Shown in pieces: positions 6,232 to 42,200 of a stretch of DNA of 64,000 nucleotides. A program made the translations under genes and the position numbers. Origin of the DNA: Heteronotia binoei (taxonomy: Eukaryota). The stretch covers positions 25,358,001 to 25,422,000 of the forward strand of contig NC_083240.1 in NCBI RefSeq assembly GCF_032191835.1, in the 5' to 3' direction. The notes under the pieces were generated by a model that saw only the letters and a list, made by a program, of their open reading frames with translations, had not been told where the DNA came from and ran no database searches. Every line of letters starts with the position of its first letter. The stretch's first letter is position 1.

Positions 6232-6297
<66 letters not shown>

Positions 6298-9522: not shown

Positions 9523-15744
<6,222 letters not shown>

Positions 15745-15788
15745 CATCCGGCTGCCTCCCACCCCCCATCTCTCCCAGCAAGCACTGT

Positions 15789-15794
15789 ATTAAA
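15789..15794 (+). terminator. Candidate SBDS polyadenylation signal (ATTAAA)
   Basis: ATTAAA 45 nt after the stop codon, followed by GT/T-rich sequence. Confidence 0.45.
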
Positions 15795-17969: not shown

Positions 17970-17975
17970 TTTATT
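17970..17975 (-). terminator. Candidate NF2-like polyadenylation signal (AATAAA)
   Basis: Minus-strand AATAAA about 1 kb after the stop, preceded by TGTAAATA (18005-18012) in U-rich UTR-like sequence. Confidence 0.5.
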
Positions 17976-18964: not shown

Positions 18965-19000
18965 TCAAATGTAGATCACGTCTGTTTTATGCTGCTGAAC
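18965..19000 (-). CDS. NF2L: NF2-like terminal coding exon ([11 protein letters not shown])
   Basis: ttgttttctacacag acceptor, phase 0, 11 aa then TGA. Same length and hydrophobic ending as the NF2 isoform-2 tail PQAQGRRPICI. Confidence 0.72.
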   Translation of the reverse strand, partial: VQQHKTDVIYI

Positions 19001-22000
19001 CTGTGTAGAAAACAATCACAATCTGAGGGGAAAGGAAGTTATTTCTACCTTTGAAAGGTAGAACACCTGGTTTGGGAACTGAGACAATACAAACATTTTC
19101 CAAATTCACAGGTAAACTAGAGATGCACAGTTTCTGGAAATTTTTAAGTCACAGGAATTTACTGGATTTTACAACATAACTGGATCTTGGAGGTTTTTTG
19201 CCATCTTCCAGGCACTGGAGTGTGGGAGGTAGTTGTGAATTTCCTGCATTGTGCAGGAGGTTGGACTAGATGACCCTAGAAGTACCTTCCAACTATAATT
19301 CTTGAATTATAGTAAATAACAAAACATTATAATAACTCAAAAATGGAAAATATTATGCCAAAATATTATAAATACTACTTAATAAACTGCATAATTTATA
19401 AATTAACTGGCATATAAAATTATACTATTAGGTGTATTTATAGAATTTAAAGTAGACAACTTTATTTTGTACTAGAAAAACTGCAACTGTTCCCAGTATT
19501 TGAGAAAGAGCTGCAAACTGCTGCATCCTATGCTATTACAGCGCTTGTATCTTAATTTTCACCATTGTTAGAGGTACAGAAAAATAAAAACACATTCTAA
19601 TCTGTAGTAAACATGTGTATCATTTGGACAGAAATATTCTCATGCAGTCACAATAGGCAGGGCTGCCAGCATTTAGATATTAAGTTGAACTATAGGACTG
19701 AAAACACAACTCTTTAATAATGTATTAACATTAAAAGCATTATCACAATTTAATTGAAGCCAATATTGTATTTAAACAAATTCAAGCACCAGTAGTTTTC
19801 AACTCTGGAGTGACGCTGCTTTCACAACGTTTTCACGACAGACCTTTTTACGGGGTGGTTTGCCATTGCCTTCCCTGGTCATTACACTTTCCCCCAGCAA
19901 GCTGGGTACTCATTTTACCGACCTCAAAAGGATGGAAGGCTGAGTCAACCTGGAGCTGGCTACCTGAATCAGTTTCCACTGGAATCGAACTCAGGTCATG
20001 AGCAGAGGGTTCTGACTACAATACTGGAGCTTTACTGCTCTGCACCACGGGGCTCAGAGTGGCCTACAGTATACGTACATATCATGGGCCTACAGTATAC
20101 TTAGGAGTAAAATGTTATTCATTCCAAAAGGGCAAAAAGGAGGGATTTTAGTCCTTCCTCAAATTTTGCCATTTTCCCTTGGCTTTCACATCTCCAAAGC
20201 AAACTTAAGAATTGGGGACAGGTTATATAGTTCTGGCCTTACCAACTCAAAAGATAACATCTGGAAATTTGGGAAGTAGAATGCTGGAGTCAAGGGGCCT
20301 CAATCTGGCCATCAGATAATTCTTGTGAAAAAAAATAAAAGGTTACTGGGGTGAGGGCTTACAGGGCTCTTCTCACCTCCAACGTCCTAATCCAGACTTT
20401 TAAAATTGGTGTTTGGGGGGGGGGGGCAGAGAAATAGAGGATAAATGTTATTTGGGCTGAGGCTTGATCCCCTAGCCTGGAACACTGACTGGTGAACGTC
20501 TTTTTGAATTGGAATTTTTAAAAAGCTAGTTACCTTAATTTGCTTTCTGGTTCCTGTCCCCACGTTTTCGGCAACAAACGGATCTGTCTGAAGGGAAGGT
20601 TTTTCTATTGGCGTTCCAAGTAAGGTGTTGTCATCTACATTTAACGGATGCATCAAGAAAGGCCGCTGAAGACTGTCTAGAAGGTCTGCCTCAAAGGCTT
20701 CGATCCACAAAGGGGTCTTGAAAGAACACATCAACCAGAAGTTAGCTTTGTGCCAACTCAAAGTGCATCCACATTACAAACCTGAACTGGTATGAAGCCA
20801 CTTTAACTGTCATGGCTCCATTTCCCCCCTCCCCAAAAGAGTCCTGGGGAGGCAGTAAGAGGTCTTCATATGATCAGAAAATCATTGCTACCCTTGGCTC
20901 CAGGGGAGTCCTGGAGGCATCTGACCGGCCACTATTGAAAGCACATACTCAATTAGATGGGCCCTTGGTCTGATCCAGTACTGACTGCCTTTATGCATTA
21001 TTGATTGCCTTTATACTTATAAAAAATAAGTTAGCTTGACTGCATTTCAACCTTGTACATTTTCCGGGAAGACCGGTCCAAGGACCCAAGCAATTCATTC
21101 CAGCGTGAGAGAAGCCCAGCCTGTTTCTCTTCAAGTTTTAGAGCATGGATTTCTGACTTGAGCTCTTTTAGCCGATCTTCAAACTTCCGGCTCTTATCAA
21201 GGTAATCTAACCTGTTGGGCACAGAAAAGAAACTTAAGGAATGAATGAATATAAATATCAGGATCAAGTATACCCTATACATCATCAGGTATGCTGCACA
21301 CATTTTTATTTTTTTTATTATTTATTAATAATTAAAATATTGTTTTAACTATGGTTAGTTTCTGAAACTGGGGTTCATCTTTCTCTCAGTAGCCTCAGAG
21401 GGAAACACCACAGAGCGAGTCAGAATGTCTGAATTTATACAAAACATGAAACAGATTCATAACTCAATTTCATATCGTTGTCTGTTGGACTGAACTAATC
21501 ACAACTAGTGGTGTGGCCCACATTCAGGCAATCACACTAATCTTGGCTACTTCAACCATGGTTTTATGTGCTGTTTGAGCTGAGCCACCTCTAGGACAAA
21601 CACTCCCAAGGCAACTGTTAGTGTATCTTGTGTCGATTATACAATAAACTTTCTGGTGAGCTCATTACCACCCCAACAGTGGAGGCTGCCCATTGCATCT
21701 CTGCATGATCTTCTGCCTCCTTCATACCAGCTTCCTCTGGGGCAGGTAATTCTTTTGTAATTTTTGCATTAAAAGGGATTTATGCATTCAATCACTCGCT
21801 CTTCTTGGCACATGGTTTCCAGGACTTCCTTTTTTTCCTCCACTGCATGGTTTTGAGCTCCTCCCTCTTCTGCTACTAGATGACACTCCTACCTCTCCCT
21901 TTCAATCTCCAAGGAGAGCCTCTTCAAGTCAATATCTCTTAAATCCGACTTCACACCTCCTTTGTCAGCACTGGCATCTCTGGTGTCAGCCAAGGAGGAC

Positions 22001-24208
22001 GGGGAGCACTTAGTGGCATGCAGAGAAAGGCAGAAAGAAAGGGGCATTGTTATTTGTTTATGACTTTTACATACTGCTTTTTGGTTAAGGTGGGGAGCGG
22101 AGAGCTCTTCCAGAATTGTTCACAATAAAGAATTAAAATCAATATTGAAACAAAAACAACAATAAATTGCCACATAAAAAGCAAGCCCAAAGCTTGATAG
22201 TTTACCTGGAATCCAAGCCTCCAAAGGCCAGGCTAAATTTTAAAAATGCTATTGCAACACAGCAAGCACACACCTTGGGGAAGTACATGCCAAAGATCCA
22301 GGGATCACAAGAAATGCCTACTGGACCAGATCAAAAGCTCTACCTAGTCCAACATCTGTGTTGTCCACAGAGGCTGGCCGGACACCTTCAGGAATCCCAG
22401 AAACAAGATATGAATGTGACAGCCTTCCCCTCTGCCACTATTACTAGTACGGTTACTAACATCTAGCATGGACAGGTATATTGCCTCTAAACATGGAGGG
22501 TCCATTTAAACTCTATGGCTTGTAATCGTTGATAGATCTTCTATAGATAGGCATTTTGGTGTCTCAAGCACTGAGGTAGAGACATTGCATCTCAGCGTCA
22601 AGCAGAAACACTGCAAGAGTTCCCAAGGTTTCAGGTCGTTTCCTGGAATCTTTACTGTCCTTGCAGTTGTGACCTCCCACAAATATCAGATAGCTTACAC
22701 CAGCATAGGAGCTACTACCTGAAATTGGTTTAATCATCCTTCCTCCAACATATCCTCAAAACTTGGATTATTTTAGCAGAGACTGATTGATTTAGCACAC
22801 CTCCAAAAAAGAACTCAAAGGCAGTTTACATTTTCCACTTAAAACCATGAATCCACATGAAGCTATCTCATAGTGAATCAGACCTTTGGCCCATCAAGGA
22901 CAGTATTGTCTACTCAGATTGGCAGCAGCTCTCCAGGGTCTCAGACTGAGGTCTTTCACATCACCTGTTGCCTTGTGCTGTTAACTGGAGATGTCAGAGA
23001 CTGAACCAGGGACTTACATGTAAAGCAGGGCTCTTCTACTGAGCCATAACACCTCCCCTAATAAAATAAAAGAACCACATGATATTTTTGTCCACTATCA
23101 CACACCCAGACTGCATTGGATATATTTAGATCCTTCCCTGAATGGCATTATTAGTTATTATTTTATCACAATAGACTAATGTGGCTATCCCAGTGGAATG
23201 TATTTCTCAGGGTTTTAAAGCCAAGGAACCTTGACAGTTAAGCAAACTTTAAAGCTGGTTTACTTTTTGAAGAAGGAAAATTGAAGAATTGCAGATTTAT
23301 ACCCCACCCTTCTCTCTGAATCAGAGACTCAGAGCAGCTTACAATCTCCTATATCTTCTCCCCCCACAACAGACACCCTGTGAGGTGGGGGGCTGAGAGG
23401 GCTCTCACTGCAGCTGCCCTTTCAAGGACAACCCCTGCGATAGCTATGGCTAACCCAAGGCCATTCCAGCAGCTGCAAGTGGAGAAGTGCGGAATCAAAC
23501 CCGGTTCTCCCAGATAAGAGTCCACACACTTAACCACCACACCAAACTGGCTCTCTTTTCTAGTACAGATGTGCTGCAGACTTACTGGAAGATGATTAAC
23601 CTTGTTGACATCTAGAAGTTTCTGCTTGACCTTTTCTTCAGCTTCCCTGGCTTCCTGCAGGTCTTGTTTCAAATGCTCGGTTTCTTTGGCCCTGCCAAAC
23701 CAAACCACTGCCATGAACATACAGGCCCTTGACTACAAATACACAACCATTTCTTAAACCAGAGGGCTGAACTTGTGACCAATGACTCCGAGGCCAGAGG
23801 CAAATATGATTCAGTACAGAACCAAATGTATTGCTTAAAAAAATAAAATGAGATCTAAGGGTAGGTGGAATACTAGAATCATTGATATGCCAAGGAAATG
23901 GCAGGCAAATGTTTTCATGGGACTAGTGGGCTTCTTGGAGATACTTAGCAAAATGGAAGCAAAAGAGGTGAATAGCTGCCAGTTATGCAAGTGCAAACCA
24001 TGCACAGATGCATACCAGTGCACTAAAACAATCATGCAGGGTGCTCCTGGATATGTTTATTACTCATTGTGAGGCCTGCTTCCTAACAGAGAACTATAAA
24101 AACATTATAGGTTATTTATCAATATGTCAATTATCAGTAACATTAAGTGGTTTTGCTCTGAATTTTGATGTAATTTGACCATTTAATTAGAAAAGGTGGC
24201 TGGCCTAT

Positions 24209-24299
<91 letters not shown>

Positions 24300-27200
24300 T
24301 TATTCTTATATCCCGCCCTCCCCCGCCAAGGCAGGCTCAGGGCAGCTCACAGAACATGGTATACCATGATTACAATAAAATACAATCATTACTATAAAAG
24401 GCAGTTAAAATATAATTACATTACATTCATCAGTTAAGTTAAATACACATTAAAATATTATAAATTATAGATTAAAGTGCTACAGTTCGATATATGCATA
24501 GGATGGCTTGTCTATGTTGTAGACAATCCAGCCAAAATTGCCATAAGTCTTACTATGGATGGGACCAATCTGCTGATAAATTAAAGTTCATCATGAATTT
24601 TGAGCAGTTAGTGGATCACAAAACGATGTTTGCGAACTGAAAAGCCACCATGACCTTCCACAAATTTTGATGCAGTTTTTGGCAGTGCGTGGAGACCAGA
24701 AAAGAGGCGTTTAAAAGACTCCCAAGACATTTAAACCCCTGCTCTTTATGAAAAACAGCTGAAAAACAGCCATGAACCAAACCACAAAAATGGAGTTTGT
24801 GCCCATCCCTAAATCTTGCCTCAGTTATTTAGTATAAACTACTGTAGGGGTGGGAAGGTGAAGGTGCAGTGAAAAAACAAATGCAGAGCTCTTTCACATG
24901 CACATGCTAGGAAAGGAAAGGTCCCCTGTGCAAGCACCAGTCATTTCCGACTCTGGGGTGATGTTGCTTTCACAACATTTTCATGGCAGACTTTTACGGG
25001 GTGGTTTGTCATTGCCTTCCCCAGTCTTTTACACTTTCCCCCCAGCAAGCTGGGTACTCATTTTACTGACCATGGAAGGATGGAAGGCTGAGTCAATCTT
25101 GGGCTGGCTACCTTAATCCAGCTTCTGCCGGAATCGAACTCAGGTTGTGAGCAGAGAGTTCAGACCCCAATTATATTCTCAGTCATTAACTGTGAAAACA
25201 GTTTAACTGGCAAAGTTTTCATCTTGTAAAAAGAAATCTGTGACTGTACCTTTTCCCTTTTCATTGTTTGGGAATTATTTTAATCTGCCAGCACCCAACT
25301 GGCACACAATCTGCCCCCACAGAGCTTTGTCAGTGCTCAAAGTGCCCAGTGCGATGACATCACCCAGAAGTGATATCATCGCACCGGGACACTCTAGCAT
25401 TTGGGTACAAAACTCTATGGCACCACAGAGTTTTTTACCCAGTACTAGAGCATCCCCACACAATGTGCCCTGCTTGATGACCTCACTTCCGGGAGACATC
25501 TTTGCATGTGTGAGAGGAATCCCCCTTGCCAGCTGCCAGTAAGATCTGGCAACCCTAGACCTCTGCAGTCTGAAAGTAAGCTGTAATTCCATGAGACCCC
25601 CAGGTCTCCCCAGAGGCTGGCATCCCTACCTGCGGTCCGACTCTTTCACCAGCTGCATGGCAATGAGCTCTGCCTCCCGCATCTTGTGCTCCATCAGGCG
25701 CTTCTCCTCCTTGGTCTTCCGGGCTGCCAGCTCCAGCCTTTGGCGTTCCTGCTCAGCCTCGGCAGCATTCTGAGCCAGCAGCTTCGCCTCGTCCTCCGCA
25801 ATTTGGGCCTTCTCAGCCAACAGCTCTGCAGCTGCCTCTGAACGGCGCTGAAGAGGGATTAAAATGGGACAGTCTAAACCAATCTTGAGATTTTCTTTTT
25901 TTAAAAAAATGCTTTCAACATCTATGGTATTTGGGAATTGTTACTTAAAAAAAATGATTTTAACTTTTCAGAATTTGACCTCAAGGCAGGAATGACAGCT
26001 TCCAGTTTGGGAAATTAGTGAAGATTTGGGGTGGAGTGTGGGGAGAGGATGGACCTCAGTGATGTATAAATGTCAGAGTCCACCCTCCAAAATTGCCATT
26101 TCCTTCAAGGGAACTAGTCTTTGTAATCTAGAGATCCGGGAGATTGCCAGGCCCCAACCTGGAAACAAGCAACACTACACCTGGAAACAAGGCTGAAGAA
26201 TAGCATAGATGGCAACCAGCTAACTGAACAGCTCATCTCCAGTCAGCAAATGCACTCTGGCTTCCAGTTATCGCAGGCTCCAACCAACTCAGAGCACCTC
26301 CAAGGCCGAGTCACCATGGCAACCCCTGCTGCCCAGCTTCAGTAAGGCTCACCAGGGCCTCGTTGGCTTGCCTGGCTTCATCTTCCACCTCAAACAGGCG
26401 CCTTTCCAGCTCTTCCTTGGCTCGCTCAGCCTCTTCACGCAGCTGCTTCTCCCTCGCAAGCCGCTGGTGCTCCATCTGCAAAATTGTAACATTCAATAGT
26501 CAGGCATAGCCAGGAGCCGCATCCCAGTTTAAGAAAGATGCTCTTGTGAGTGTAACATTTTGTAGGTAAGCTTTTGCTTTCCCAGCATCATGTTTACAAC
26601 AATCCTTGGCTAAGGGACTAGTCTGCTGGAATCTGCTATTTACAAGGAACAATCAAGTCTTCATTATCATCCACCTCAGTCTCTACAGCAACCAACCTCC
26701 AAGTAGGTCCTGGAGATCATGTGGAATTAGGGATGCCAGCCTCCAGGTGAGACCTGAGGGTCCCCTGGAATTACAGCTCATTTCCAGATTACAGAGATCA
26801 GTTCCCCAGGAGAAAATGGATGCTTTGAAGGGTGGACTCTAGGGCATTGTACATTACTGAGGCCCCTGTTCTCAGACTCCACCCCCAAATCTCTAGGAGT
26901 TCCCCTATCTGGAGCTAGCAACCCTACATCTCAGCCAGCAGCCCAGGACCTGGCAACCCTACCTGGAATTACAACTGATCTCTGCAAAAGCTCAGCTACC
27001 CTGGAGAAAATGGCTGCTTTGGAGAGTGGACTCTAAGGCATTATAGCCCACTAAGATCCCTCCCCTTCCCAGACCCCACCCCCAAACATCCAAGAATGTT
27101 GCAGCTCCGAGCTGGCAACCCTAGCCTCCCAACCCTGCAAGCTGATCAAGAGCTCTGTGACTGGGAAAGCATTTTCAGCAGCTGTGGAGCCAACTTTTCT

Positions 27201-30200
27201 CCCAGAGTCACCTTCTTTCTCGCCTTCTCTTCCCTGGCTTGAGCTTTCATTTGCTGGATCTCAATGGGGTCTACTCTCCTCCTCCTCATGAACAAGTCGT
27301 GGTTTCCAATGAAAAGCTGCATGATCTGCAGGAAGAAAACAGGAGTGTTTTTGTTGGGCCGCAGCAAAGGTCCAAGGTTGGGCTTCCAGCAGACGTCACA
27401 CAGATGTTTCTGGGAAGCCTACAAGCAGGGCCCAAAGTACATGGACATTCAATTTCTCCAGTGACCCCTATTGTCTTGCAGACAGTTAAAGATGCTGGGG
27501 ATGCCCTAACAAAGCCCTGAAGTACTAGGGTCAGCCTATCCAAAAGAACACTACAACCCCTATATTTCATCAAGGCGTGTGTTTTGTTTAATTTATTTAT
27601 GATTTATATCCCGCCCTTCCCACCAAGGTGGCTCAGGGCGGCTCACAACACATGAAATCCAACATAACAATATTCAGTTTAGGCATTTACACAATTAAAA
27701 ACATTTAAAATATAAAAACATTAAAACAACAATTAAAACAACACAGAAGTCTAATAGAGCTACATTTAGTTTCCTATGCCGGTTAGTTATAGGCCAGCCG
27801 GAAGAGGGTTGTCTTACAGGCCCTGCGGAACTGAGCAAGGTCCCTCAGGGCCCTCACCTCTTCCGGCAGCTGGTTCCACCAGGAAGGGGCCATTACAGAG
27901 AAAGCTCTATCCCTGGTAGATTGCAGGCGGGCTTCCTTTGGCCCGGGGATAACGAGAAGATTTTGGGTTCCCGATCTCAGCACTCTCTGGGGAACATGTG
28001 GGGAGAGACGGTCCTTCAGGTAGGCAGGTCCTAGGCCATATAGGGCTTTAAAGGTGATGACCAGCACCTTGTACCGGAAGGGTTAAGTCACTTCTGACTT
28101 ATGGCAATCCCATAAATTAATGACCTCCAAAACATTCTATCGTTAACAACCTTGCTCAGTGATTGCAAACTGGGGACCATGACTTCCTTTATTGAGACAA
28201 TCCCTCTCATGCTGGGTCTTCCTCTTTGCCTGCTGCCTTCAACTTTTCCTAGCACGATTGTCTTTTCATCAGACATGCAGAGAGGCATCTTGGTGGCTGC
28301 CTCTCTGCCCTGGAATTCCCTCCCCCTGAAGACTCGCCAAAGTCTCTGCAAAGATTGCTTTGTTCAAATTGGCTTTCAGGTGTCCAGGGGGAAGAAGATA
28401 AGACTGGGGTGATTTGGAATATCAGGGAGTTATGGAATTACACAAGCTGCTCCAAGTCCTTGGGATGCAATGGGCTATAAATTAAATCAAGTGAAATACA
28501 ATTTCAAAAAAGAATTAACTTTAACCAGAGGTCTGCTGCCTCTCTACCTGAAAGTTCCGTTCACAGTTATAATGTCACTCAGAAGAAGAAAAACTCCTAT
28601 AACTTATCCCTTTCAAGGTGAGGACACAATTATTCATATTTTGCTGACAGGTGGACAAAGGCTGAGAGGTAAATGACTTGCCCCTGATCACACTGTAGCC
28701 TCCTGGATCAGGTCCAAGCAGAGCACTGCACCAACAGATCACTTGCCCCTTCATTCCAGTGTGTTACTTTATCCTTCAATGGCCCACCAGGAACTTGGCT
28801 TTTTTATACCACTCCCTCCCAGTGTGACAGAAAGATGCCCGCAGGGCGGCAGCTGACAGAAAACCCTCACCAGTTTATTGACTTTGGGCTGTGAGGAGAA
28901 GAACTTGAAGACTTCGGCTTTCTTGTCAATAGGCTTAATTGTTAACTGGAGAGGAAGAGAGAGAAAAGAGGGCGTAGTCCATCTCATGATGAAACAAGTC
29001 ACAAGGACAAATAGGCAAACATACCTCAAGACATACTGGTGCCAGGGAAGGGAAAAGATCCAACCAGAAATGACAATCCCCTCCCAAGATATAATACCCA
29101 CCTAGTCCCAGTTCCATCTGAGACACTCTCTCCTTTTGGCTTCCGAGTACCAACAATGAGCCACCAGACAGAAGGCAGAAAGCAGACAGGTGCATCCTCA
29201 TCAGGCCTGGATCAGCCAAGAGGCCCTCTGCTCCCCAGCTTCCAACTACTACCAATGGGTCCCTCAGAGCAAGCAGCTGGGCCCTTTCTTTGCCATGACT
29301 GGATCCCAGTCCAATTAGGGCTGCCAATTCCCAGTTAGGAACAGGGGATCCCCCAGTCTGGAGGCCCTCCCCTTGCTTCAGAGTTATCAGAAAGCGGGGA
29401 GGGGAGAGGGAAATGTCTACTGGGCACTCCATATGGAGACTGGTTCCAATAGGGTATAAATGGGTATCTGTGCTCTAGGGGGGGCTGTTTTTTGAGGTAG
29501 AGGCACCAGATTTTCAGTATAGCATCTGATGCCTCCCCTCAAAATATTCACGAAAGTTTGGACCGGGGGTTCAATTCTATGAGCTCAACAAAAGATGACC
29601 CTATCCTCCATTATTTCCAAATGTAGGGAAGGCATTTAAAAGGAACTTGGTCCCTTTAAATGTGATGGAATCGTGCTTGTCACAACCTTGCTCCTGGTTC
29701 CACCTTCAAAGTCCCCAGATATTTTTTGAATTGGACCTGGCAACCCTAAGTCCAATTGAGGAAGTCCTCCTTCGAGCTAACTGATCTGGTTCCTTTCATG
29801 AATACATGAGGCTGCCCTGTACCATCAGACCCTTGGTTTGTCACGGTCAGTGTTGCGTCCTCCGACAGCCAGTGGCCCTCCAGGGCCCCATAGGTCAAGG
29901 TCTTTTGCATCACCTGCTACCTGATCGTTTTAACTGGAGATGTTGGGGATTGAACCTGGAACCTTCTGTACACCCAGCAGATGCTCTATCAGTGGAAGAC
30001 TTTGTATGAAGAGCCCTTTTACATTTTAGAGTAGTTTTATGGTTTTATTTCCCTGCATAAACTAACTTGAGAACTATGACTCTAGAGCACATAATTATAG
30101 CAAACAAATAAAACATGGTCCATGGTCCACAGAGAAGTTCTCCTTCCCGAGAACCTTTTGAAATGGACAAATGATGCCCCAGAGCAGAAGCATCTACAAG

Positions 30201-33200
30201 GGCAGCATTGGTCAGACTCCAACTCTACCACCCTCAATGGCAGCATAAATCCACTGTCCCGGCAGCGCCTTCTCCCCATGACACCATCTTGGTACACCTT
30301 CCTACCTCTTTCTCGCTGTAGGAAATGTTCCGAATGCTGCTCCATTTGAAAGACTTGTTGGGAGAGAACCGATTGTTGATGCTGTACACGTGGATCCCTT
30401 TGGCATCAACACCGAGGAGGAAATCCATGTGGTTCTTCTTCTGCTGCAAAGGACAGTAGTAGATACAAGACCAGAGTGAAAACCTATGACACACCTGGGG
30501 TCAATCTCCACAAGGGGCAGCTGAACCAGATAGCCATTACATGGTAGAACAGCTTTTCCCCATCCTATCTCTTGTCTTTCTCATTAAGACTTCTGAATAG
30601 GTTTATCGGTTTTGTATGGCACTTTGCACGTGGTCCACACTGTGTAAATACTAAAAGATTGTGAGTGAGGTAGGTTTTTGAACATGACAGGTGCACGACA
30701 TGAAAAGAGAAAAGCTATCTGTACTTACAACAATGGGAAAATAATTAACCCCGTACATTGCCAAGTCCTGTGCGATTTTTAAATAGTTCATCTCAGCTTC
30801 ATACCTGGAGGAAGGGGATAGAAACTGTGTTTGGAAATACAAGTTCCAATCCAGAAAATTTAAGAACTGTACTTCTTTTGGGTAGCTGGAAGCAGCTGTG
30901 TTCCATTTTTATAGCCCCACCATTCTCAAGCTTTTACATTTTTAAAAAACCACTCTGTTCCCAGGTTCCCATCTGTCTGTCATACTGCAAGGTGACTGAG
31001 AAATGGAATCCAGGTAAGGCTATACAAATAGGAGGCAGGCATGATCCTCTAGGAGACCATTAAGTAGGTACAGGATGTCCTTTTCCCAGGAATTAGCTGC
31101 CCAGTGGGACCACACCCACCACCCACTATACGATCCTAGCAAAAGGTGTGCCGGTACCTGGCTATACCCCTGTGTCCTGCATACCAGGCAGCTATCCTGT
31201 CTTCCCACATGTCAGGTGTCATTTGATACTGACGGAGGACCTATACAAAGAAAAGAGAGTGCTTTCAGTCAAATCTCAAGGCTGCTTCTCTTGGAGCAGA
31301 GCCCCCTTAGCCCCACCCCACACCCACATATCTTGGAAAAGCACTACACCCCTGAGTCCCAAAGCCAGGAGTCAACATCATGGGAAGGCCTCAGCCTCCA
31401 TGCCCTGTTGTTGGCCATCCAGAGGAACTGGCTGGCCACTGTGTGAGACAGGATGCTGGACTAGATGCACCACTTGTCTCATGCAGCAGGGCTCTCCTTA
31501 CGTTCTTCCAAAGTCTTACCACAGGCTGAAAGATGGCTGATTGTTTTTAAACAAGAACCTCACTTGCTGCAGCAAACCAAAGAGTCACCTGTTCCGACAC
31601 TCCATTTCCAACAAGACCTTCTGAATTTACTCCAAGACTCAGGAAGCAAGAGAATATCAGGAAATGCATCTGCAGGTACCACACTGGGGACCGCTGTCTA
31701 AATTAATAATTCCTGCACAAGATAAACTAGCAAAGCACGCAAAGGGTTAGGCTACAAACTTTCCCCATGATGTGCTTGTACTTTAATTTCCAAGAAGCCC
31801 TGAAGGCACCTCTTGTGTTTGGTTTGCTCCAACTGTGTGTGGCCAACTATAGTCCTACTCTCTATGCTCACCTCCTCTTGTTCTTTGCAAATAGGTGCTT
31901 CTGTTGCCTAATCCTGTCCTGGATCACCCTAGCAATGGCAGGCAAGCATGTTTTGAGGATAACTGAAACTCTCTGTAAATTTACCATGCTGTATTTTTTT
32001 TATTTCCATGCCAATAAAGGTATTTGGTTTTTGGCATGTTTTGAGGAAGGATGGTTCACTGATCTTCTCCTGGAAGAACTGCATAACTACTTTTCCAGGA
32101 ATACTGTTTGAAGGCTTTGATGGACTTGAGGGGTGAATTTAAACAGACTTACACTCTTTGGCAAGAGCTCTTCCTGGGCTAGGAAGCCTGGTTTGTGGAG
32201 TTCGGGGTCATAGTCACCATACTATAATAGAAAGAGAAAGTTTCAGGACTACAGCCCTTTCACAAAACAGATCTTGCATTTGTGGCGTACGTACGCCCTT
32301 GCAAACAGGAAAATAGATACCTCAGCATCCAGAAGAACTGGATGGCAATTCACAGCAATAGATAAAGTGAATGTAGAAAAGAGCAAGAGTCCAGCAGAAC
32401 CTTAAAGACTAAGAAAATTTGTGGAGGGATATGAGGTTTCACGAGTCTGAAGAAGTGAGCAATGACTTGTGGAAGCTTATACCCTGCCACATTTTTTTTA
32501 GTCTTTAAAGGTGCTTCTGAACTCTTGTTCTTTTCTACTGCTACAGACAGACTAACATGGCTACCCATCTAGATTGAAGTGAATTATAGATATTTCTGCA
32601 CAGGTTATCTGCCCCAAGTTCAATGCTTATTGAGAAGGGTTTTTCCCCTCTGCTTCTCTACAGCATGCAGTGCATTCCTGTTAATATGTGGGATTTCCCC
32701 AGTTTTGATCTGATCTTTCTCAAAGCTGCTTTGATCCAAAGTTTTGGGGAAGAATGCAATAATGCCTGGATGGCTGCTGTGTAGGCAGGAAAATCTGAAT
32801 TTTTCATGTACATTACACCCACTTTCCCTGACCCTGTCCCCACAGCAGCCATTTCCTCCCACCGTCACTGTGGGACTCTTTATCTTTAACAAACTGGCAC
32901 TAGAATATTGTTATAGTGCTATATTGTTGTAATGATAGATATTTCAGGTTCTCATCTTCCTAAAAAAACCCAACCCCTCTATCTCCACTCATTGCAAAGA
33001 TATAAAGGAAAAGGCAGATCTTTGCAACAGAAAGAGATAGAGACTTATTTATAAAATGAAAGCTGGGATTCACAGAATCTATTTTTACATTAGTCTGTTG
33101 CTATAACACAGGGGTGCCAGCCCATGCCTGGCAACTGGGGGATGGCCATGTTGACTGTGCCACAATGTCACTTCTTGGGAAACCTGGAAGTAAGGTTGGA

Positions 33201-36200
33201 AAGCTCTAGGAATGGCTAGAAACTTTATGGTAATAGTCTTCAAAGAGGCGTGAGAGAATAATGAACAGGGCTGTGTGTAAGCTGTGATTCCACAGGAGTG
33301 CAAAAAACCTGCAGAGTGTAGCAACTGGCTATAAAATTTGGCTCTCTGAGCATCTCAGTTCATTTTAAAGAATTGCAGAGTTCCTGGTCTTCATGGTTAA
33401 GAAGATATGCTCAAAAGCATATAGTGACTGAACCTGTACATCGGAGGGACATGCCAGGATGTTGTGCTTCTCTGATCCAAATAATGAACTGTATGGATAT
33501 TCTTTTGGCTTATTTTCCATTAGTATGCCTCAGGGATTCTTTTAGGGGGCAGGTTGGAGGTAGACATGTCCACCACACCATCTATTCAAAACAGTTTTAG
33601 GACCACTGGTTGCCAGAAAACAGATTCAAATTTGCAAACGTAGATCTGGCCTCTGGAGTCCACAACCTCTTTTCAGGTCAGAAAGAAGCTAATGGCATGC
33701 CCCTGACTCCTTTTCTTTAGACTACACTGAAACATATCAGGATCCCTTCACTGGGGTGCGCTCTTTTTAAAAGAAAAATCATATTAAAAGACGGGGGGGG
33801 GGGGTGCAGAATCAGGAGCAAACTGCCATGTCTGTGTTCCTGTTGCTTTTCCAGCACTCCGGAGCCATGCTTTTACACATCAATTAACACCCTATAATTA
33901 TGTAGAGCATTTTTTTTTACAACCCAGCAATTTTAAAGCCCCACCTTTGCTTGAACAGCATAAGAAGCCAACAAAATTGTAGCCTCAGGAGAACAGTAGA
34001 TTTCTTCATCCAGTATTTGTTTCTTAACCTAAGGCACAGAGCAGGGAGAAAGAAAGAAAACCGAGGCTTGAAGACAAAGCAATACATGCCCAGACTTTGC
34101 CTTGGCATCTGTCATATAACCGTTTAGGGTTAAAAATGAAAAGGTTCTGCGGTAAACAGGATACTTGAGGTGGATCCCGAAGTAACTCTCTTCCAAGAGG
34201 CATTTCCCATTAGAGCTCTTAAAGTCTGTTCCATGCGCAAGAAAATAAAAATTAAAAAAAGATTAAGAAAAGACTGGCTACTCCCACACAGTAAGAATGC
34301 TGGGCTCCTCTCACAAAATTAAGGATTGGCTTGCTGGACCATTCTCATCCAGTATTCAATTTCCAACAGAGGCTGTTAACCAGATGCCCCTAATGGAAAC
34401 CCATAAGCAGAACATGAATAATAATAAGACTGCTGATTTATACGCCGCCGTTCTCTCTGAATCAGACACTCAGAGCGGCTTACAATCTCCTATATCTTCT
34501 CCCCCCACAACGGACACCCTGTGAGGTGGGTGAGGCTGAGGGAGCTCTCACAGAAGCTGCCCTTTCAAGGACAGCTCTGTAAGAGCTATGGCTGACCCAA
34601 GGCCATTCCAGCAGGTGCAAGTGGAGGAGTGGGGAATCAAACCCGGTTCTCCCACATAAGAGTCCACACACTTAGCCACTGCACCAAACTGGCTCTCTCT
34701 ACAGGCCTCTCTAACTGTTTGGCACTCAGCAGCAGACTGCCCCTGCATGTGGAGGCTCACTAATCCAAAGGCTAATCAAAGAGCAGAAAAAAACACACTG
34801 CAATCCTCAATCAATGGATTTAGAAGGATGAGCCACTGATAGAACCATCCTCCATGAATTTGTTCCACTAGTATTTTAAAGCAATCTATGCAAGTGGCTA
34901 TTAGCATAAGGGTGCATGTGATAGCCAATCACCTACATTAATCAGTTATTATTTATTTCTTTTAAAATGTGTTGTGTGGAGAAACATTCCCTTATCTCTG
35001 TCCTGAACCCACAGCCAATCGATCCTATGGCAAAAAAAACCCCATCTCCATCTGTCCAAACAGTTCACAACTTTATCAACTTCAACCATGTATCATCCCT
35101 AACCAGCATCTTTTTTTTTTAACTGCAGCATCTCAAACGCCTTATAGGCTGCATTCACACATAATAAACAAAAACAGGGTTTGTCGTTACAGCAGAAAGG
35201 CTTGGCAAGCCAAACAGCTCACATTCCCCCCATCCCTTGATCAGGAAAATAAATTGATAGGCCACAATTTGTTTTTGTCTACAAACCAGGATTACAAAGC
35301 AAGATGAAAACATGGTTGGGAACCCTGGTTTCTGAGCGAGAGACCAAATCAGTCCAAAATCTGTTGGACACATTGAAGTATTAGAACCAACATAAAAGTT
35401 GGGGACACGAAAAGCAGAGTGCACAAGCTTAGGGTTGCCAGGTCTGACTCGAGAAATATCTGGGGACCTTGGGGGTGGAGCCAGGAGCAAGGGTATGACA
35501 AGCACATTTGAACTCCAAATGCGTTTTAAATGCCTTCCCTCCACTTGGAAATAATGAAGGACAAGGGCGCCTTCTTTGGGGACCCATAGAATTGGACCCC
35601 CTAGCCCAACCTTTTTTAAACTTGGGGGGGATGTTCTGAGAGGCACCAGATGCTATGCTGAAAATCTGATGCTCCTGCCTCAAAAACAGCCCCTCCGGAG
35701 GCCCAGATACTCACAGATCAATTCTCCATTATACTCTATGGGAACTGGTCTCCATAGGGTATAATGGAGTGCCCAGCAGATATTTCCCTCCCCCCGCCCC
35801 GCTTTCATATAACCCTGAAGTGAGGGGAGGGCCTTCAAACCAGGAGATCTCCTGCCCCCAGCTGGGGATTGGCCACCCTACACAAGCTGAAGGACTTCCA
35901 AACACCTACCATGTGTTGTTACATTAGAATGGGCCCATAACCTTGGGGGTGGGGGGAGGGTCTATGCTTTGTAGAATAGTTCTATTGGATGTGTGTTATG
36001 TCAGGAGAAGACCTGTTGCCTCCTCCTTCTGCATTCATACACACTGGGGCTTTACAAAAAATATTTATGCATAGGATTGCCAATCCCCAGGTGGGGACAA
36101 GGGATCCCCCGGTTTGGAGCCCCCCCCCGGGTCATCAGAAAGCGGGGGGGGGGGGAATGTCTGCTGGGAACTCTATTATTCCCTATGGAGATTTATTCCC

Positions 36201-39200
36201 ATAGAAAATAATGGAGAATTGATCCACAGGTATCTGGGGCTCTGGGGGGGGGCTGTTTTTTAGGGTAGAGGCACCAAATTTTCAGTATAGCATCTAGTGC
36301 CTCTCCCCAAAATACCCCCCAAGTTTCAAAAAGATTGAGCCTCAAAAGAAGGTGCCCCTATCCTTCATTATTTCCTATGGAAGGAAGGAATTGAAAAGGT
36401 GTGCCGTCCCTTTAAATGTGATGGCCGGAACTCCCTTTGGAGTTCAATTATGCTTGTCACAGTCTTGGTCTTGGCTCCACCCCTAATGTCTCCTGGCTCC
36501 ACCCCCAAAGTCTCCAGATATTTCTTGAATTGGACTTGGCAACCCTATTTATGCATGTCCTTTCTGCTCAGATGTTCCCACCTACAAGTTCAAACAATAC
36601 CACCTTGGAGCAGCTGGATTACACATTGGCTTCAACACTGTAGTTCAGCACAATCACAGTATCTGCTCATCTGCACTTTTAAACCTCAAAAGGTTTCAGT
36701 CCTAAGGAAACTCTTGCCGTTCCCCAAATCAACTGGACTTTCTTGCACACAAGATGAATCATTGAACAAATGAACTAGCACAGCCAAGTTCCCAAATGAT
36801 CGTAACATTTTCCCTGCTCTTGACCCTTCGTAATGCAGGCGTGATCTCAGATTCTGACTGCCAGGGAATCCTGCAAGCTCCAGTGTGTTGCTTTGCCCTC
36901 CCCCTCCCTTTCTGTGTTTCTTTTGGAGCTAGAAAAATTCCCCTCTAATTACATACCGCAGTGTCAAAACAAGCTGAGGCAGGCTGAACTCAAGAAGACA
37001 AGCATCCACGAAAAAAAGCCAAAGGAGATGGCCTTTCCTCGCCTCCTCCCCAAGAGTTCAAGAAGAACAACCAGGGAAGAGGAGATTTAAAAAACAAAAA
37101 CCCAAAAGATTCCATGGGGGAAACTAGTTCTAGCCAGCATATCTCTTAAGATGTTAGCAAGTCAAAAGAGCCCATTTGGTGTAGTAGTTAAGGGCACAGA
37201 TGCTTATTTGGGAGAACCAGGCATGATTTCCCACTCCTCCCCATGCAGCTGCTGGAGTGACCTTGAGTCAGTCACAACTCCGACAGAGACTGTTCTGAAA
37301 AGAGCAGTTTCTGTCAGAACTCTCAGCCCCGTCTACCTCACAGGGCGTGAGGTAGGGGAAGGGAAAGGTGATCGTAAGCCACTCTGAGACTCCTTAGGGT
37401 AGGGAAGGGTGGGATATAAATCCAATCTCCTCCTCTTCTTCTTATCTATTTGATCTCTCAACCCAAAGATTGGGCTGGTTAGCTAATTAGAGGCCCCCAT
37501 AGTCTGAATCGGTATAAGGCAATTACATATAAACATGTACCAACTCGCTGATTCCAGTCTTGGGGCCAATCCACATGATACAAATTCCTCATGGCCACCA
37601 CCAGGACTTTTGCCTCAGACATGCGATGGGGTTCTGTGCCTTCCAAACACATTTATTTATTTTTGTTAATTTGTATTCCACCCTTTTCCACGAGTGGGCT
37701 CAGGGCGGATAACGAAAGTCAAAACAATTAAAAACTACAAGGTAAAACCGAAGGATACAATAAAACAAACAACATATACGTCACAAGCAATGTTCCCTCT
37801 AAGCTGCGGAGTCTTGTGAGCAAAAATTCTACTTTGTGAGCTACTGGCATTAAAGCTGTGAGCTACTGCATACATTATTGTGCTCTGGGGTCATCCTTCC
37901 TGAGCTAAGATAAAAATGTGTGAACTGGATGTCAAGTCTGTCTGTAACTCTGGCTCAGACAAAGAGCATTCTGGGTAGAACCAAAGTATATTCAAATGCT
38001 GCTAGCTCATACTCTCCCTACCCCCCCTTTCCTGTACTGTGTAGCTTTGCTTTGAAATGGAGAGATGTGAAAGTCTTATCTGTGCCTTCTCAGGCCTGGC
38101 TCGGAAGGGAGTCAGGAGCCCACTACGATCAAGGCCAAGCAGGCCTGAGAACAAATTGGTAACATCAATGTGTGAATGTTCCCTGCATAATCCTCCCCCC
38201 CTTAGGAATTCCTTTGAAGTACCCCTTATATGCAATGTATCTACAGTATACTCTTTAGTCTTTCAATACTGGCCTAGCCTCAAGTATCAGTATCAATAAA
38301 ATAGTTTCTTTGTATCAACAACGACTCATTGAATCTGCCGACTTGACACTGGAGGCTAAAAATCTGTGAGCTGGCTCACTCTAATTCAGCTTAGAGGGAA
38401 CAGTGGTCGCAGGTGGCAGTTTCCAGTTGGGCACATTATATATATCAATACTAGGCCCAGAGATAGAATAATAGATTGAGATAAGATTAAAAAAAAGATA
38501 GCATCATGACAGGAAAGAGAGGCCAAGCAGATGGAAATAAGGATGTCCACGGCCTCAACCAAAGGTCCGGTGGAATAACTCCGTCTTGCAGGCCCTACGA
38601 AATGGCATTAATTCAGGTAGGGCCCGGATCTCCACAAGGAGCTGATTCCACCAGGCTGCAGCCATGCAGAGCAGATGTGGTTCTGATCACAACAGCAACA
38701 TGCAGATGGAAATGGCTTCAGCAACCCCCACCTGGCCAGTTTTCACCACCTGAAATAGCCCCAGGGAGCCATTACATTCTGCCTATCTCTCAAGTGGTAA
38801 ACTTACAAGAAACAATAGTGATGTTGTGTAAGTTATCCTACCAGAGCAAACAGCAATTCTCCAAATCTCTTTCAGGATGCAAAGAACAAGGGGTGGGGTG
38901 GGGTGGGGGAGAGAGTGAAGCTGCTTCTAACTGCACACTGCGGCCCTCCAAAATTGGCCCTACACAACAGCCTCATGGCAGGACTTTGTATCCTACGAAC
39001 CGGCCCTCAGCGTAGCATTGCTGACTCTGCATGCTCTTCCCCATCATCATCCTCGCCCATCACGTTCCTGCCAACGGGACAGGGCCTGCCCTGCCCCTCC
39101 ACACTGTGCCAGATTGTCCCACCATTCCCTTAGGTCTTCAGCCCCTTTCCTGGCACATAATCTGCTGCTTGCCCAGGCCTAACAAACCACACTGCCTTGC

Positions 39201-42200
39201 CTCTCCCAATGCCTGTGTCAGGTTTTCACAGCCTCCCACACACCGGCAAACCAGAGCAGAAAAGTAATCAAAAACTTTGCAAAGGCAGTAGTAAGGTGGG
39301 GCTTCCCCAATGCATTCTTCATACCTCAGGTACCACTTCTGCTTGGCACTGCTCCAAGTAGAAGCAGAAGATGAGGCTGAGTTGCCTGAAGCCGAACCGA
39401 AATATGTAAAATCAAGCACACCAGGGGAAGTAACTCAGCAGCAAGAGAACCTGCTTTGCACAAAAGAGGTCCCAGGTATCTCAGGTTAAAAGGAGCTCAG
39501 GCAGCAGGAAAAGATCTATCTCTTGGCTGAGATCTTGGGGAGCAGCTACTGGTTGGAGAAGTCAAGCTATGCAGATCAGTGGTTTGACTCAGTATAGGGC
39601 ATAAGTGCAGTTTTGCATGCAGAAGGTCTGAGGTCCAATTCTTGGCACCTCAGCACACATGAAACTGTCTTAACAGACCAAAATTAGTGGGGAACGCAGA
39701 AATCTTCTGTATCAGACCCACCACACAAGTTGAAGACATGGAAAGCAGAGCTCACAAGCCAAAGAACATCATGAAGCTGCCTTACACCAAATCGGACCCT
39801 GGGTCCATCAAAGGCAGTATTGTCCACTCGGACTGGCAGCTGCTCTCCAAGGTCCCAGGCGAAGATCTTTTGATTCCCCTTTGAACTGGAGATGCCACGG
39901 ATTGAACCTGGGACCTTCTGGATGTCAAGCAGAGGCTCTAGCACTCAGCCACTGCCAGTTTAAGTGATACAGGAGGAGAGCCGCTGCCAGTCTGAACAGA
40001 TAATACCCTGGCCTTGATCAGTCAAGGGTCTGGTTCAGTATAATTTAATTTAATTATTATTATTTATTGATACCCCGCCCTATCCTGCAAGCGGGCTCTG
40101 GGCGGCTTACAACATTAAAAAACCTTACAAAACATCAAACAAACTACATCCAAACTAAATAATCTCATAATTGCAGAATTAACAGAAACCATGATCCACA
40201 GCAATGGCAACAAGTCATAAGCCACACATAGGCTGGTAGTGTTCAGCATAAGATAAGCACCTAGATGGTAAGATGCTGGGGGGAGCGATGATTTCAGGGG
40301 GCACCCGTTGGATCAATTAAAAGCCTGGCAGAAGAGCTCCATCTTACAGGCCCTGCAAAACTTAGAAAAGTCCCGCAGGGCCTGGATCTCCAGTGGGAGA
40401 TCAATCCATCAGGTGGGGGCCTGAACCAAAAAGGCCCTGGCCCTTGTTGAAGCCAGTTGGGCGTCCTTAGGACCGGGATCACAAGAATATGTTGTGCAGC
40501 TGTCCTCAGAACCTGAGGCAGCTCCATGTGTTCAAAAACAATCCTGTTATCCTGGGCACAGCCAGAGGATGAGCTGGGGTTGGGGAAATCTTCAAGGAAT
40601 CCGGGGGCTGAGAATGGAGCCTGGGTGGAATCTAGAACTTCTGGTCAGGCACAGAGAAAGGGAAGAATTCAGAGGATACTGGAGAGAGTCTGGCAAAATC
40701 TGGCCTTCCTGGTTGCTCAACAGAAGAGGGTCTTACCGGTTCGCAGCTCTAGTTCTTGAACACGTTGGCTCCTTCAGGACCATAAAGATAAGCTATTTTT
40801 GGCACCTCTGTCTGCCTCTCTGTGCTTTCACATGGGAACAAGAGCGGCAGCAACTTAGATGCACACAAATGCCACTAGCTTTGGGATCAAACAGGATCTT
40901 TTAAATTTCTGATAATCATTGTAAACATTTCTTCGTGAATTAAAACTTTCACTTTCATTGTTGTGTTCTTAAAAAGTTTATTTTTACATTATGCTATGAC
41001 AAAAGCCCATCTCTTTCTGGGCAGGCATCCCTTTGAAATCAGTAAATTCTGCTCTGCCCTGAGAGCAGCTAAATGATCCAATCACATCTGATGCAGAAGA
41101 GTAGATTTACCAAAAGCAAATGGTATGAAAGAGGCATGCCTAGAACAACGGATCATACAGAGATGCAGCAGGCAGCCTCCTCTGTGGACAAATGCTTTGG
41201 ACTCCCAGGATACATTCAAATTTTTAATTAACTTCTTTTTCATGATCCAACATTTGGGAATGATGAGGAAACAGCGGTAGCATCTAAGACAAAGTATGAA
41301 TGTTTTCTGGGGAAGAAGGGTTTGCACAACAGCATGTGTTCAACTAACATCAGCCAAAAAGAAGGACTGAAAGAAAATTCATCTAAAACTTCAAAACCAA
41401 CTTTAAGGAAAAGAAATACCTTCTGACCTGCAGGAAGAATAAGTGTTGGGTGATCTCCTGCAGCAGCTCCTCTTCAACTTTCTCTGGGTAAAATTTAGCC
41501 AGAAAGCGAAAACAAACCGGATCTTCTTTGGGGATTTCCTGATCTAAAACCTTGAGGTGAAAAAGGGAATAGGATTAGCCAAGCTTCTGCTGAGAGCAGG
41601 TGGGGCTGTGAATGTTTGTAGAGTAGCTGCTCTTTCTAATGTTGTCTCAGACACCAGCTCCGCGGGTGGCTTTAGCCTGTTTGCTTGCTTTTTCAGACCC
41701 GCATCCCATTTGCAATATGGGTTTAAAAACACTCTCTTCTTTCCCACTGTTTCAAGGAGTGAGAAAAACAAAAAGGCTTGATGAGAGCCACCCGGTGAGA
41801 TGAAATGGGGAGAGATTTTTCACACAGGTTGCCTAAGCACTTTGAAATCCCTCTCTCTGGCAGCTGGAGGGCATGCACAGAAGGCAGCAGTACAATTTTA
41901 ATTGCCCCAGGATCACATATTTAAATAAGTTCAAGGTGACAAAGAACTTGTGATTGTGTTTCAGATTTTCTGTTGCTTCATCTGGGATCAGATGTGTTCC
42001 AGCATTTACAGTTCTTCCCCCAAACCTGGACGTCTTTCCACACACCCCATTTCTACTATAGAATTTTTTTCTCTCGGTTTCATGGATATTGATTCTCTTC
42101 ACCACTCTCTCAACACAATATTTCTGAGACTTTGTCCTTTTTTCACTGGGAGAGGTTGGTTAACAAAATGTTTCATGCAGGGTAGGGGTTAGAACACATG

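What the first reader, a model, noticed from the sequence alone, without database searches (positions are those of the whole stretch)
20534..20716. Unannotated-looking 61-codon exon inserted in the merlin-like C-terminal tail
Seen: between exon 15 and the terminal exon lies a 183-nt stop-free segment in phase 0/0. It has a GCTAAC branch point about 25 nt upstream, a pyrimidine tract ending CAAG, and an AAG|GTAACT donor. It encodes [61 protein letters not shown], which has no counterpart in NF2 as I know it and does not look like a repeat. Established: the merlin C-tail folds back on the FERM domain to control the open/closed state. Inference: a 61-aa insert would alter autoinhibition. It also carries short trafficking-type motifs (DDNTLL acidic dileucine, DPF) that may be chance.
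Basis: partly seen in the sequence, partly recalled or inferred. Interest (0 to 1): 0.7.

Follow-up and report, generated by a model that had tools for sequence, protein, structure and literature searches.

The report
Known penultimate exon of second merlin gene
The 61-codon segment is a real coding exon, but it is the ordinary, already annotated and published next-to-last exon of the second merlin gene (an NF2 paralogue that most placental mammals lost), not a new insert.

Summary
Window 20716..20534 (minus strand) is a 183-nt stop-free phase 0/0 segment with the stated acceptor, donor and branch site.

It is a genuine exon:
- It lies directly between exon 15 and the terminal exon ([11 protein letters not shown]) in about 75 of 97 database models of the "merlin-like" gene. 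These come from geckos, other squamates, turtles, crocodilians, birds, marsupials, monotremes and xenarthrans.
- An intronless mRNA-like contig from another squamate contains it.
- One RNA contig very probably joins 21052 to 20716 in this species or a close relative.
- Among five geckos it shows only a single 3-nt indel and dN/dS of 0.13-0.53.

It is not new. Shabardina et al. [quoted passage not shown] Squamates carry a 60-61-aa version.

The DDNTLL and DPF motifs are not conserved and look like chance. AlphaFold2 predicts the encoded tail to be disordered. Detectable similarity to NF2 stops at the end of exon 15.

A side lead: the terminal exon looks like the counterpart of NF2's alternative exon 16. 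If so, amniote merlin1 would be "isoform-2-like".

Verdict: real, ordinary, already known. Low interest.

The parts
18965..47268 (-). Whole merlin1 (NF2-paralogue, 'merlin-like') coding region. Sixteen exon-sized tblastn matches to the gecko orthologue, plus the short terminal exon.
   Evidence: tblastn of Eublepharis merlin-like P0005 and Gekko kuhli P0076 against the window. Pfam ERM_helical and ERM_C on exon translations.
21052..21211 (-). Exon 15, encoding [53 protein letters not shown]. It is the last part with detectable similarity to NF2 and ERM_C.
   Evidence: (ERM_C positions 10-39 of 77). RNA contig X2 record 15 lies on 21052-21182 and ends exactly at the exon boundary.
20717..21051 (-). 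Intron 15, with GCTAAC branch site at 20746-20741 and acceptor AG at 20718-20717.
   Evidence: Alignments to the other gecko loci have 37-177 gap columns here, against 0-3 in the exon.
20534..20716 (-). The finding: penultimate coding exon of merlin1, 183 nt, 61 codons, phase 0/0. It is the squamate version of the '68-aa tetrapod insertion'.
   Evidence: orthologous exon in amniote models. (frame kept, dN/dS 0.13-0.53). (mRNA-like contig of a relative). (52 letters at depth 2.5 in bin 20658-20854).
19001..20533 (-). Intron 16, donor GT at 20533-20532. It contains a SINE-like repeat at about 19800-20060.
   Evidence: Very high repeat-type RNA depth at 19673-20066.
18965..19000 (-). Coding part of the terminal exon, [11 protein letters not shown] plus stop (TGA at 18967-18965). 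DVIYI is invariant in all 36 aligned amniote orthologues.
   Evidence: Polypterus and Erpetoichthys nf2b X2 end VGHYDSEVIYI*.

Best explanation
The segment is the constitutive next-to-last coding exon of merlin1. Merlin1 is the second vertebrate merlin gene, an NF2 paralogue kept in most vertebrates and lost in most placental mammals. The exon was added in the tetrapod lineage between exon 15 and a short terminal exon. It is about 67-68 codons in turtles, archosaurs and mammals, and 60-61 in squamates after a 6-7-codon deletion. It encodes a fast-evolving, most likely intrinsically disordered stretch of the C-terminal tail. Conserved islands within it are PSW(I/M)KxFE, LQRPF and VGTGTRKQI(I)K. 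It leads into the invariant C-terminal ...DVIYI. Shown: exon identity, orthology, splicing in relatives, purifying selection, and absence of similarity to the NF2 exon-17 tail. Inferred: the tail acts as a flexible spacer carrying short linear motifs, and it does not supply the exon-17-type last helix that closes NF2 isoform 1. On that view merlin1 would be a more open, 'isoform-2-like' merlin.
For: Database searches. The representatives search with the 61-aa peptide found three relatives. One is the Sphaerodactylus townsendi merlin-like protein, which reads exon15|exon|[11 protein letters not shown]. The C-terminal 149 aa of that protein is matched at about 100% coverage in NCBI merlin-like models of squamates, turtles, crocodilians, birds, marsupials, monotremes and xenarthrans. 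In these models the exon follows exon 15 directly and precedes ...DVIYI.

Literature. [quoted passage not shown]

Transcripts. Two intronless Logan contigs (L005, L006) hold exon 14, exon 15, this exon and the terminal exon contiguously. RNA contig X2 record 15 (183 nt) lies with 131 letters on 21182-21052. Bin 20658-20854 has depth 0.66, which equals 52 x 2.5 / 197 and so accounts for its other 52 letters at the exon's 5' end.

Selection. Across five geckos the exon has no indel, or one 3-nt indel, while intron 15 has 37-177 gap columns. dN/dS is 0.13-0.53, against 0.04-0.23 for exon 15.

Structure. AlphaFold2 with 82 sequences gives pLDDT below 50 and coil for residues 559-639 of the Eublepharis orthologue. 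The FERM domain and the exon-14/15 helix score 66-91 in the same model.

Limit of similarity to NF2. The sequence search stops within exon 15 and the profile search stops at its end; nothing beyond exon 15 aligns.
Against: No raw junction reads from this species were seen. The 21052>20716 joint is deduced from depth arithmetic, not listed by the tool. The only available runs were two low-coverage metatranscriptomes of one study. The donor at 20534 has no RNA support in this genome. Some lacertid isoform models read through the equivalent donor, and one Rhineura isoform uses an internal acceptor, so some alternative use exists. Column identity in the exon (0.49) is as low as in the disordered linker (0.43). 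The structural models have low global confidence (pTM 0.25 and 0.35). A short helix at WIKAFEADVFD appeared in the shallow-alignment model but not in the deeper one. The function of merlin1 itself is unknown.
Confidence: 0.93

Rival explanations
1. It is a facultative cassette exon, skipped in the main isoform and included only in some tissues. It would then switch the tail between two states, as exon 16 does in NF2.
For: Alternative 3' ends are predicted in some species. Lacertid isoforms read through the donor, Rhineura X2 uses an internal acceptor, and Candoia and turtles have alternative ends. Polypterus nf2b has two alternative tails.
Against: None of the roughly 97 models joins exon 15 directly to the terminal exon. 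Models without the exon simply stop after exon 15 or run into the intron. The mRNA-like contigs include the exon. It has been kept in frame across amniotes.
Confidence: 0.05
2. The exon's first residues ([12 protein letters not shown], or PSWMKTFE in other amniotes) are the displaced equivalent of the last C-ERMAD helix (NF2 RVAFFEEL*, ERM RIDEFEAM*). They would dock on the FERM domain, so the exon would preserve autoinhibition rather than abolish it, and the remainder would be an appended tail.
For: There is a similar hydrophobic pattern right after the exon-15 boundary. W and F are conserved in most amniotes. The first AlphaFold2 model put a helix at 571-581 of the orthologue.
Against: Pfam ERM_C covers only positions 2-40 of 77. 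Neither phmmer nor a profile search aligns the tail to merlin or ERM ends. The better AlphaFold2 model has no helix there and pLDDT of 34-41. In marsupials and xenarthrans the F is replaced. In Polypterus the exon-17-type tail is a separate alternative exon, which makes an exon-17 origin non-colinear.
Confidence: 0.12
3. It is a chance open frame in an intron that happens to have splice-like flanks, and is not coding.
For: The gene span holds 259 comparable AG..GT stop-free segments. The peptide alone gives no Pfam hit. The word search found nothing.
Against: Orthologous peptide is present across amniotes. dN/dS is below 1 and the frame is preserved. It is included in transcripts.
Confidence: 0.01

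Closest known systems
Merlin1 C-terminal insertion (Shabardina et al. 2019, Genome Biol Evol, PMC6978628); NCBI 'merlin-like' gene models such as XP_048374563.1
   Same: It is the same gene family member and the same position, after the exon-15 part of the C-terminal domain. The sequence is orthologous, and it is followed by the same terminal ...DVIYI. The paralogue is absent from most Eutheria and present in armadillo, as the paper states and one search shows.
   Different: Here, and in other squamates, it is 60-61 rather than 67-68 residues. A block (SSWPCTN in the archosaur and turtle consensus) is missing. The paper treats it as a protein-level insertion; here it is resolved as one discrete phase 0/0 exon.
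NF2 alternative exon 16 (merlin isoform 2 tail PQAQGRRPICI; PMC4530865, PMC8318988)
   Same: It is an exon between exon 15 and the last exon that determines the C-terminal tail.
   Different: NF2 exon 16 is 45 nt, carries its own stop and is alternative. This exon is 183 nt, has no stop, appears constitutive and shows no sequence similarity to it. The likelier counterpart of NF2 exon 16 is the merlin1 terminal exon: 11 residues ending I-x-I, and an alternative partner of an exon-17-type tail in Polypterus.
ERM / merlin C-ERMAD (Pfam ERM_C, PF00769)
   Same: Exons 14-15 upstream match ERM_C positions 2-40 and human merlin CTD.
   Different: The exon-coded segment matches no part of ERM_C. There is no conserved KYKTL/actin-binding tail and no AFFEEL-type end.

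Membership tests
merlin1 (vertebrate NF2 paralogue, PMC6978628) | FERM + ERM alpha-helical + partial C-ERMAD architecture | tested here: met
   tblastn of full-length gecko merlin-like proteins covers 16 exon blocks from 47268 to 20531. ERM_helical and ERM_C hits on exon translations. Orthologues carry FERM_N/M/C and ERM_helical.
merlin1 (vertebrate NF2 paralogue, PMC6978628) | Extra stretch of about 68 aa in the C-terminal domain of tetrapods that NF2 lacks | tested here: met
   The 61-aa exon aligns to the 67-68-aa stretch of turtle, crocodilian, bird and mammal models. It has no match to human merlin CTD.
merlin1 (vertebrate NF2 paralogue, PMC6978628) | Conserved serine equivalent to merlin Ser518 (KRLS motif) | tested here: met
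   [13 protein letters not shown] is encoded at about 21950. R505-L506-S507 of the reference are invariant in A1.
merlin1 (vertebrate NF2 paralogue, PMC6978628) | Closer to merlin1 orthologues than to NF2 in a phylogeny | not tested
   No tetrapod NF2 sequences were retrieved and no tree was built. Assignment rests on 70-97% exon identity to gecko merlin-like models and on the diagnostic tail.
merlin1 (vertebrate NF2 paralogue, PMC6978628) | Genomic neighbourhood distinct from NF2 | tested here: inconclusive
   The downstream neighbour has a Flavodoxin_1 exon. I take it for TYW1 from memory only. Synteny in other species was not examined.
NF2 exon-16-type alternative exon | Short exon (45 nt) with an in-frame stop giving an 11-residue tail | tested here: not met
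   The exon is 183 nt with no stop. The terminal exon at 19000..18965 fits this description instead.
C-ERMAD last helix / ERM_C C-terminal half | Match to ERM_C profile positions 41-77 | tested here: not met
   ERM_C hits stop at profile position 39-40. The exon alone gives no Pfam hit at E<=10.
Acidic dileucine / DPF trafficking motifs | Motif conserved among orthologues | tested here: not met
   DDNTLL is replaced by ADNSTML, TEDNTLL, ADNTAL, VTNGSLP and TNKIQHT. DPF is replaced by DLL, DQL, NSL and NTL.

The most novel reading that the evidence does not exclude
Amniote merlin1 may be a constitutively 'isoform-2-like' merlin. Its 11-residue terminal exon (VQQHDSDVIYI*) would be the counterpart of NF2's alternative exon 16 (PQAQGRRPICI*). 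Polypterus nf2b still has both tail types: VGHYDSEVIYI* and an exon-17-type ...VYLEDV*. The two-tail switch would then predate the merlin1/merlin2 duplication. Tetrapods would have fixed the exon-16-type end and added this exon as a disordered arm carrying new linear motifs (PSWxKx[22 protein letters not shown]) for partners still unknown.
Probability: 0.35. Interest if true: 0.4.

Novelty: already known. Interest (0 to 1): 0.12.

Why it matters
For genome annotation, the last two coding exons of merlin1 are easy to miss. The Gekko kuhli model stops after exon 15 and the Sphaerodactylus model lacks most of the FERM domain. A correct model in this gecko should therefore include 20716..20534 and 19000..18965.

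Biologically, merlin1 is an almost unstudied paralogue of a major tumour suppressor. Its tail is where it differs most from NF2. Knowing that the tail is exon 15, then a tetrapod-specific disordered exon, then an exon-16-type end gives a concrete starting point for asking whether it is regulated by head-to-tail closure at all.

None of this changes the verdict that the finding itself is ordinary and already described.

Tried and rejected
- Word search with the 61-aa peptide found nothing. This was expected from the length filter and says nothing about full-length kin.
- Pfam on the exon alone, and on the 128-codon open frame, gave no family.
- My first idea was that [10 protein letters not shown] is the homologue of the NF2 exon-17 or ERM last helix. 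It got no support from Pfam, phmmer or a profile search against PDB sequences, or the better AlphaFold2 model. It is kept only as a low-probability rival.
- The first AlphaFold2 run, with 36 close orthologues, was too poor to use (pLDDT 59, pTM 0.25). The second, with 82 sequences, is better but still has low pTM (0.35). No fold search was run on either model.
- A search for an exon-17-type relic (...FFEE[LV]*) on the minus strand of 5000-21100 found nothing.
- The RNA runs were two shallow metatranscriptomes dominated by repeats. They show no reads on the donor side of the exon.
- The supplement of PMC6978628 is not held.
- My recollection that zebrafish nf2a is merlin1 was wrong or at least unsupported. 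Proteins named nf2b carry the fish merlin1 motif.
- The window's exons were not joined into one protein. Full-length orthologues from the database were used instead.
- The N run in the window was left alone.

Full report
Observation. The acceptor is ...ttctttcaAG|ACC. The donor is AAG|GTaact. GCTAAC lies at 20746-20741, placing the branch A 26 nt upstream. Exon 15 ends ...SSRKMYK|gt at 21052 in phase 0, and a terminal exon starts at 19000 and reads [11 protein letters not shown]. These features alone are weak evidence. The 28.3-kb gene span contains 259 AG..GT, stop-free, phase 0/0 segments of 150-250 nt, and the open frame itself runs on for 128 codons through both splice sites.

What the gene is. 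Stop-free stretches on the minus strand between 47268 and 18965 encode FERM, ERM-helical and C-ERMAD-like sequence. tblastn of full-length gecko 'merlin-like' proteins covers 16 exon blocks at 70-97% identity. The sequence is merlin-like but clearly diverged from NF2. Shabardina et al. 2019 (PMC6978628) describe exactly such a gene.

Is the exon real? The word search with the 61-aa peptide found nothing because of its length filter. The exhaustive representatives search found three relatives. Two are open-frame calls on short genomic contigs of close relatives, at 92% and 75% identity. The third is a Sphaerodactylus townsendi protein (UniRef A0ACB8ED56, clustered with XP_048374563.1 'merlin-like') that reads ...SQKIYK | TPSWIAAFEPNLL...RKQIK | [11 protein letters not shown].

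I then searched with the last 149 residues of that protein. This returned 97 proteins, most covering about 100% of the query. They come from geckos, lacertids, iguanians, snakes, an amphisbaenian, turtles, alligator, many birds, marsupials, monotremes, armadillo and tamandua. In about 75 of them the segment sits directly after exon 15 and directly before ...DVIYI. The models that lack it merely end after exon 15 or run into the intron, and none joins exon 15 to the terminal exon.

Transcript evidence.
- P0055 is encoded by two Logan contigs of 3974 and 2409 nt (SRR12656983 and SRR12656984) as one continuous 1950-nt frame. Window exons 14, 15, the candidate exon and the terminal exon map contiguously onto them. 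These are spliced mRNAs of a squamate relative.
- In the two RNA runs that hold parts of this stretch, contig X2 record 15 (183 nt, depth 2.5, no mismatches) lies with letters 53-183 on 21182-21052 and stops exactly at the exon-15 boundary. The only other X2 signal nearby is depth 0.66 in bin 20658-20854. That equals 52 x 2.5 / 197, which is the missing 52 letters placed at 20716-20665. I read this as a 21052>20716 junction, but it is a deduction, not a listed joint.
- Nothing covers the donor side of the exon.

Selection. I aligned the window with four gecko loci: Eublepharis (L001), a Logan contig (L002), Paroedura (L003) and Sphaerodactylus (L004).
- The exon has no indel, or one 3-nt indel. 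Intron 15 has 37-177 gap columns.
- dN/dS in the exon is 0.13-0.53, against 0.04-0.23 for exon 15.
- Across 36 amniote orthologues, column identity to the reference is 0.49 in the exon. It is 0.76-0.85 in the FERM, helical, exon-15 and terminal parts, and 0.43 in the disordered linker.
- Conserved islands are PSW(I/M)KxFE, LQRPF, LN and VGTGTRKQI(I)K.
- Squamates lack a 6-7-residue block present in other amniotes (consensus SSWPCTN). This explains 61 versus 68 residues.

Relation to NF2 and ERM tails.
- Pfam ERM_C matches exon 15 and the orthologue only over profile positions 2-40 of 77.
- phmmer, and a profile of 36 merlin1 tails, align to human merlin CTD (4zrj_B) only within exon 15, the profile reaching its end. 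They align to fly Merlin (7edr_C) over the same region, and nothing aligns beyond that.
- My initial idea was that [10 protein letters not shown] is the homologue of AFFEEL or IDEFEAM. It is therefore unsupported.

Structure. AlphaFold2 on the Eublepharis orthologue with 36 sequences was poor (pLDDT 59). It put a short helix at 571-581. With 82 sequences including fish orthologues, the FERM domain reaches 66-87 and the exon-14/15 helix reaches 91. Residues 559-639, which cover the whole exon-coded segment and the terminal 11 residues, stay at pLDDT 34-41 with no secondary structure. pTM is only 0.35, so the domain arrangement is not informative. The most likely reading is an intrinsically disordered tail.

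A side result on the terminal exon.
- Fish proteins that NCBI names nf2b carry the paper's fish merlin1 motif (PHSNRNSAYM) and end ...MAFFEEV*, an exon-17-type end.
- Polypterus and Erpetoichthys nf2b have two predicted tails after the same ...FPISR: VGHYDSEVIYI* (11 residues) and WNPEALTSTVYLEDV*.
- NF2 has the same pair: exon 16 PQAQGRRPICI* (11 residues) and exon 17 LTLQSAKSRVAFFEEL* (PMC4530865; PMC8318988).
- The amniote merlin1 terminal exon therefore looks like the counterpart of NF2 exon 16. Polypterus has no insert before it, which fits a tetrapod origin of the 61-68-aa exon.
- No exon-17-type relic was found downstream in the window.
- NF2 isoform 2 is reported to be constitutively open (PMC8318988). 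A weakly autoinhibited merlin1 is thus a reasonable inference, but it is untested.

Verdict. It is, however, the ordinary, widely annotated and published penultimate exon of merlin1. Novelty: already known. Interest is low. The remaining value lies in correct annotation of the last two exons in gecko genomes, and in the modest evolutionary lead on the terminal exon.

The window's exons were searched one by one by reference and never joined. The N run was not touched. Read laying was given 5901 letters.

Noticed in passing
window 18965-19000 (minus strand); proteins P0107-P0109: The 11-residue terminal exon [11 protein letters not shown] matches the alternative tail VGHYDSEVIYI* of Polypterus and Erpetoichthys nf2b. 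Their other isoform ends in an exon-17-type ...VYLEDV*. This mirrors the NF2 exon 16 / exon 17 pair and suggests the two-tail arrangement predates the merlin1/merlin2 split.
   Followed up: partly
proteins P0110, P0135, P0137, P0139 and similar: Fish proteins named nf2b by NCBI carry the fish merlin1 motif PHSNRNSAYM of PMC6978628 and end MAFFEEV*. By that criterion fish nf2b, not nf2a, appears to be the merlin1 orthologue. A zebrafish paper (PMC11646113) reports nf2b as the dominant paralogue in embryos.
   Followed up: partly
proteins P0076 (Gekko kuhli) and P0004 (Sphaerodactylus townsendi): Existing gecko models of this gene are defective. The Gekko kuhli model stops at ...RKMYKV just after exon 15 and misses the last two exons. 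The S. townsendi RefSeq model (448 aa) lacks most of the FERM domain. By exon identity the window's species is a gecko closest to the Gekko kuhli model but not identical to it.
   Followed up: partly
window 18294-18884, 19082-19278, 19673-20066, 22825-23021, 23219-23612: Interspersed SINE-like repeats in the introns and 3' region attract enormous summed contig depth, up to about 450,000, in the two RNA runs. They show many variant letters and false joints. This is repeat signal and not expression of this gene.
   Followed up: no
window 18742-19224: RNA-run contig X1 record 3 (488 nt, depth 4.8) runs unbroken across the terminal-exon acceptor at 19001/19000. It may be unspliced pre-mRNA, DNA carry-over or a relative's sequence, having 5 mismatches and 5 gaps.
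   Followed up: no
window 3350-3622 and about 6621-6830 (minus strand): The downstream neighbour has a flavodoxin-domain exon (Pfam Flavodoxin_1, E=6e-9) and a KIFYGSQTGTAK-type exon. It is probably TYW1, named from memory only. That would place the gene outside the NF2 neighbourhood.
   Followed up: partly
window about 43520-43740: A run of 154 N lies inside an intron of the gene.
   Followed up: no
window about 24146-24346: A long AT-rich trinucleotide microsatellite, which translates as a poly-Ile run, lies in an intron.
   Followed up: no
proteins P0008, P0009, P0012, P0013, P0054, P0075: Predicted alternative uses of the orthologous exon exist. Lacertid isoforms read through its donor (IKVTELGN...) into a long alternative tail. 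Rhineura isoform X2 uses an internal acceptor that keeps only the last 19 or so residues.
   Followed up: no
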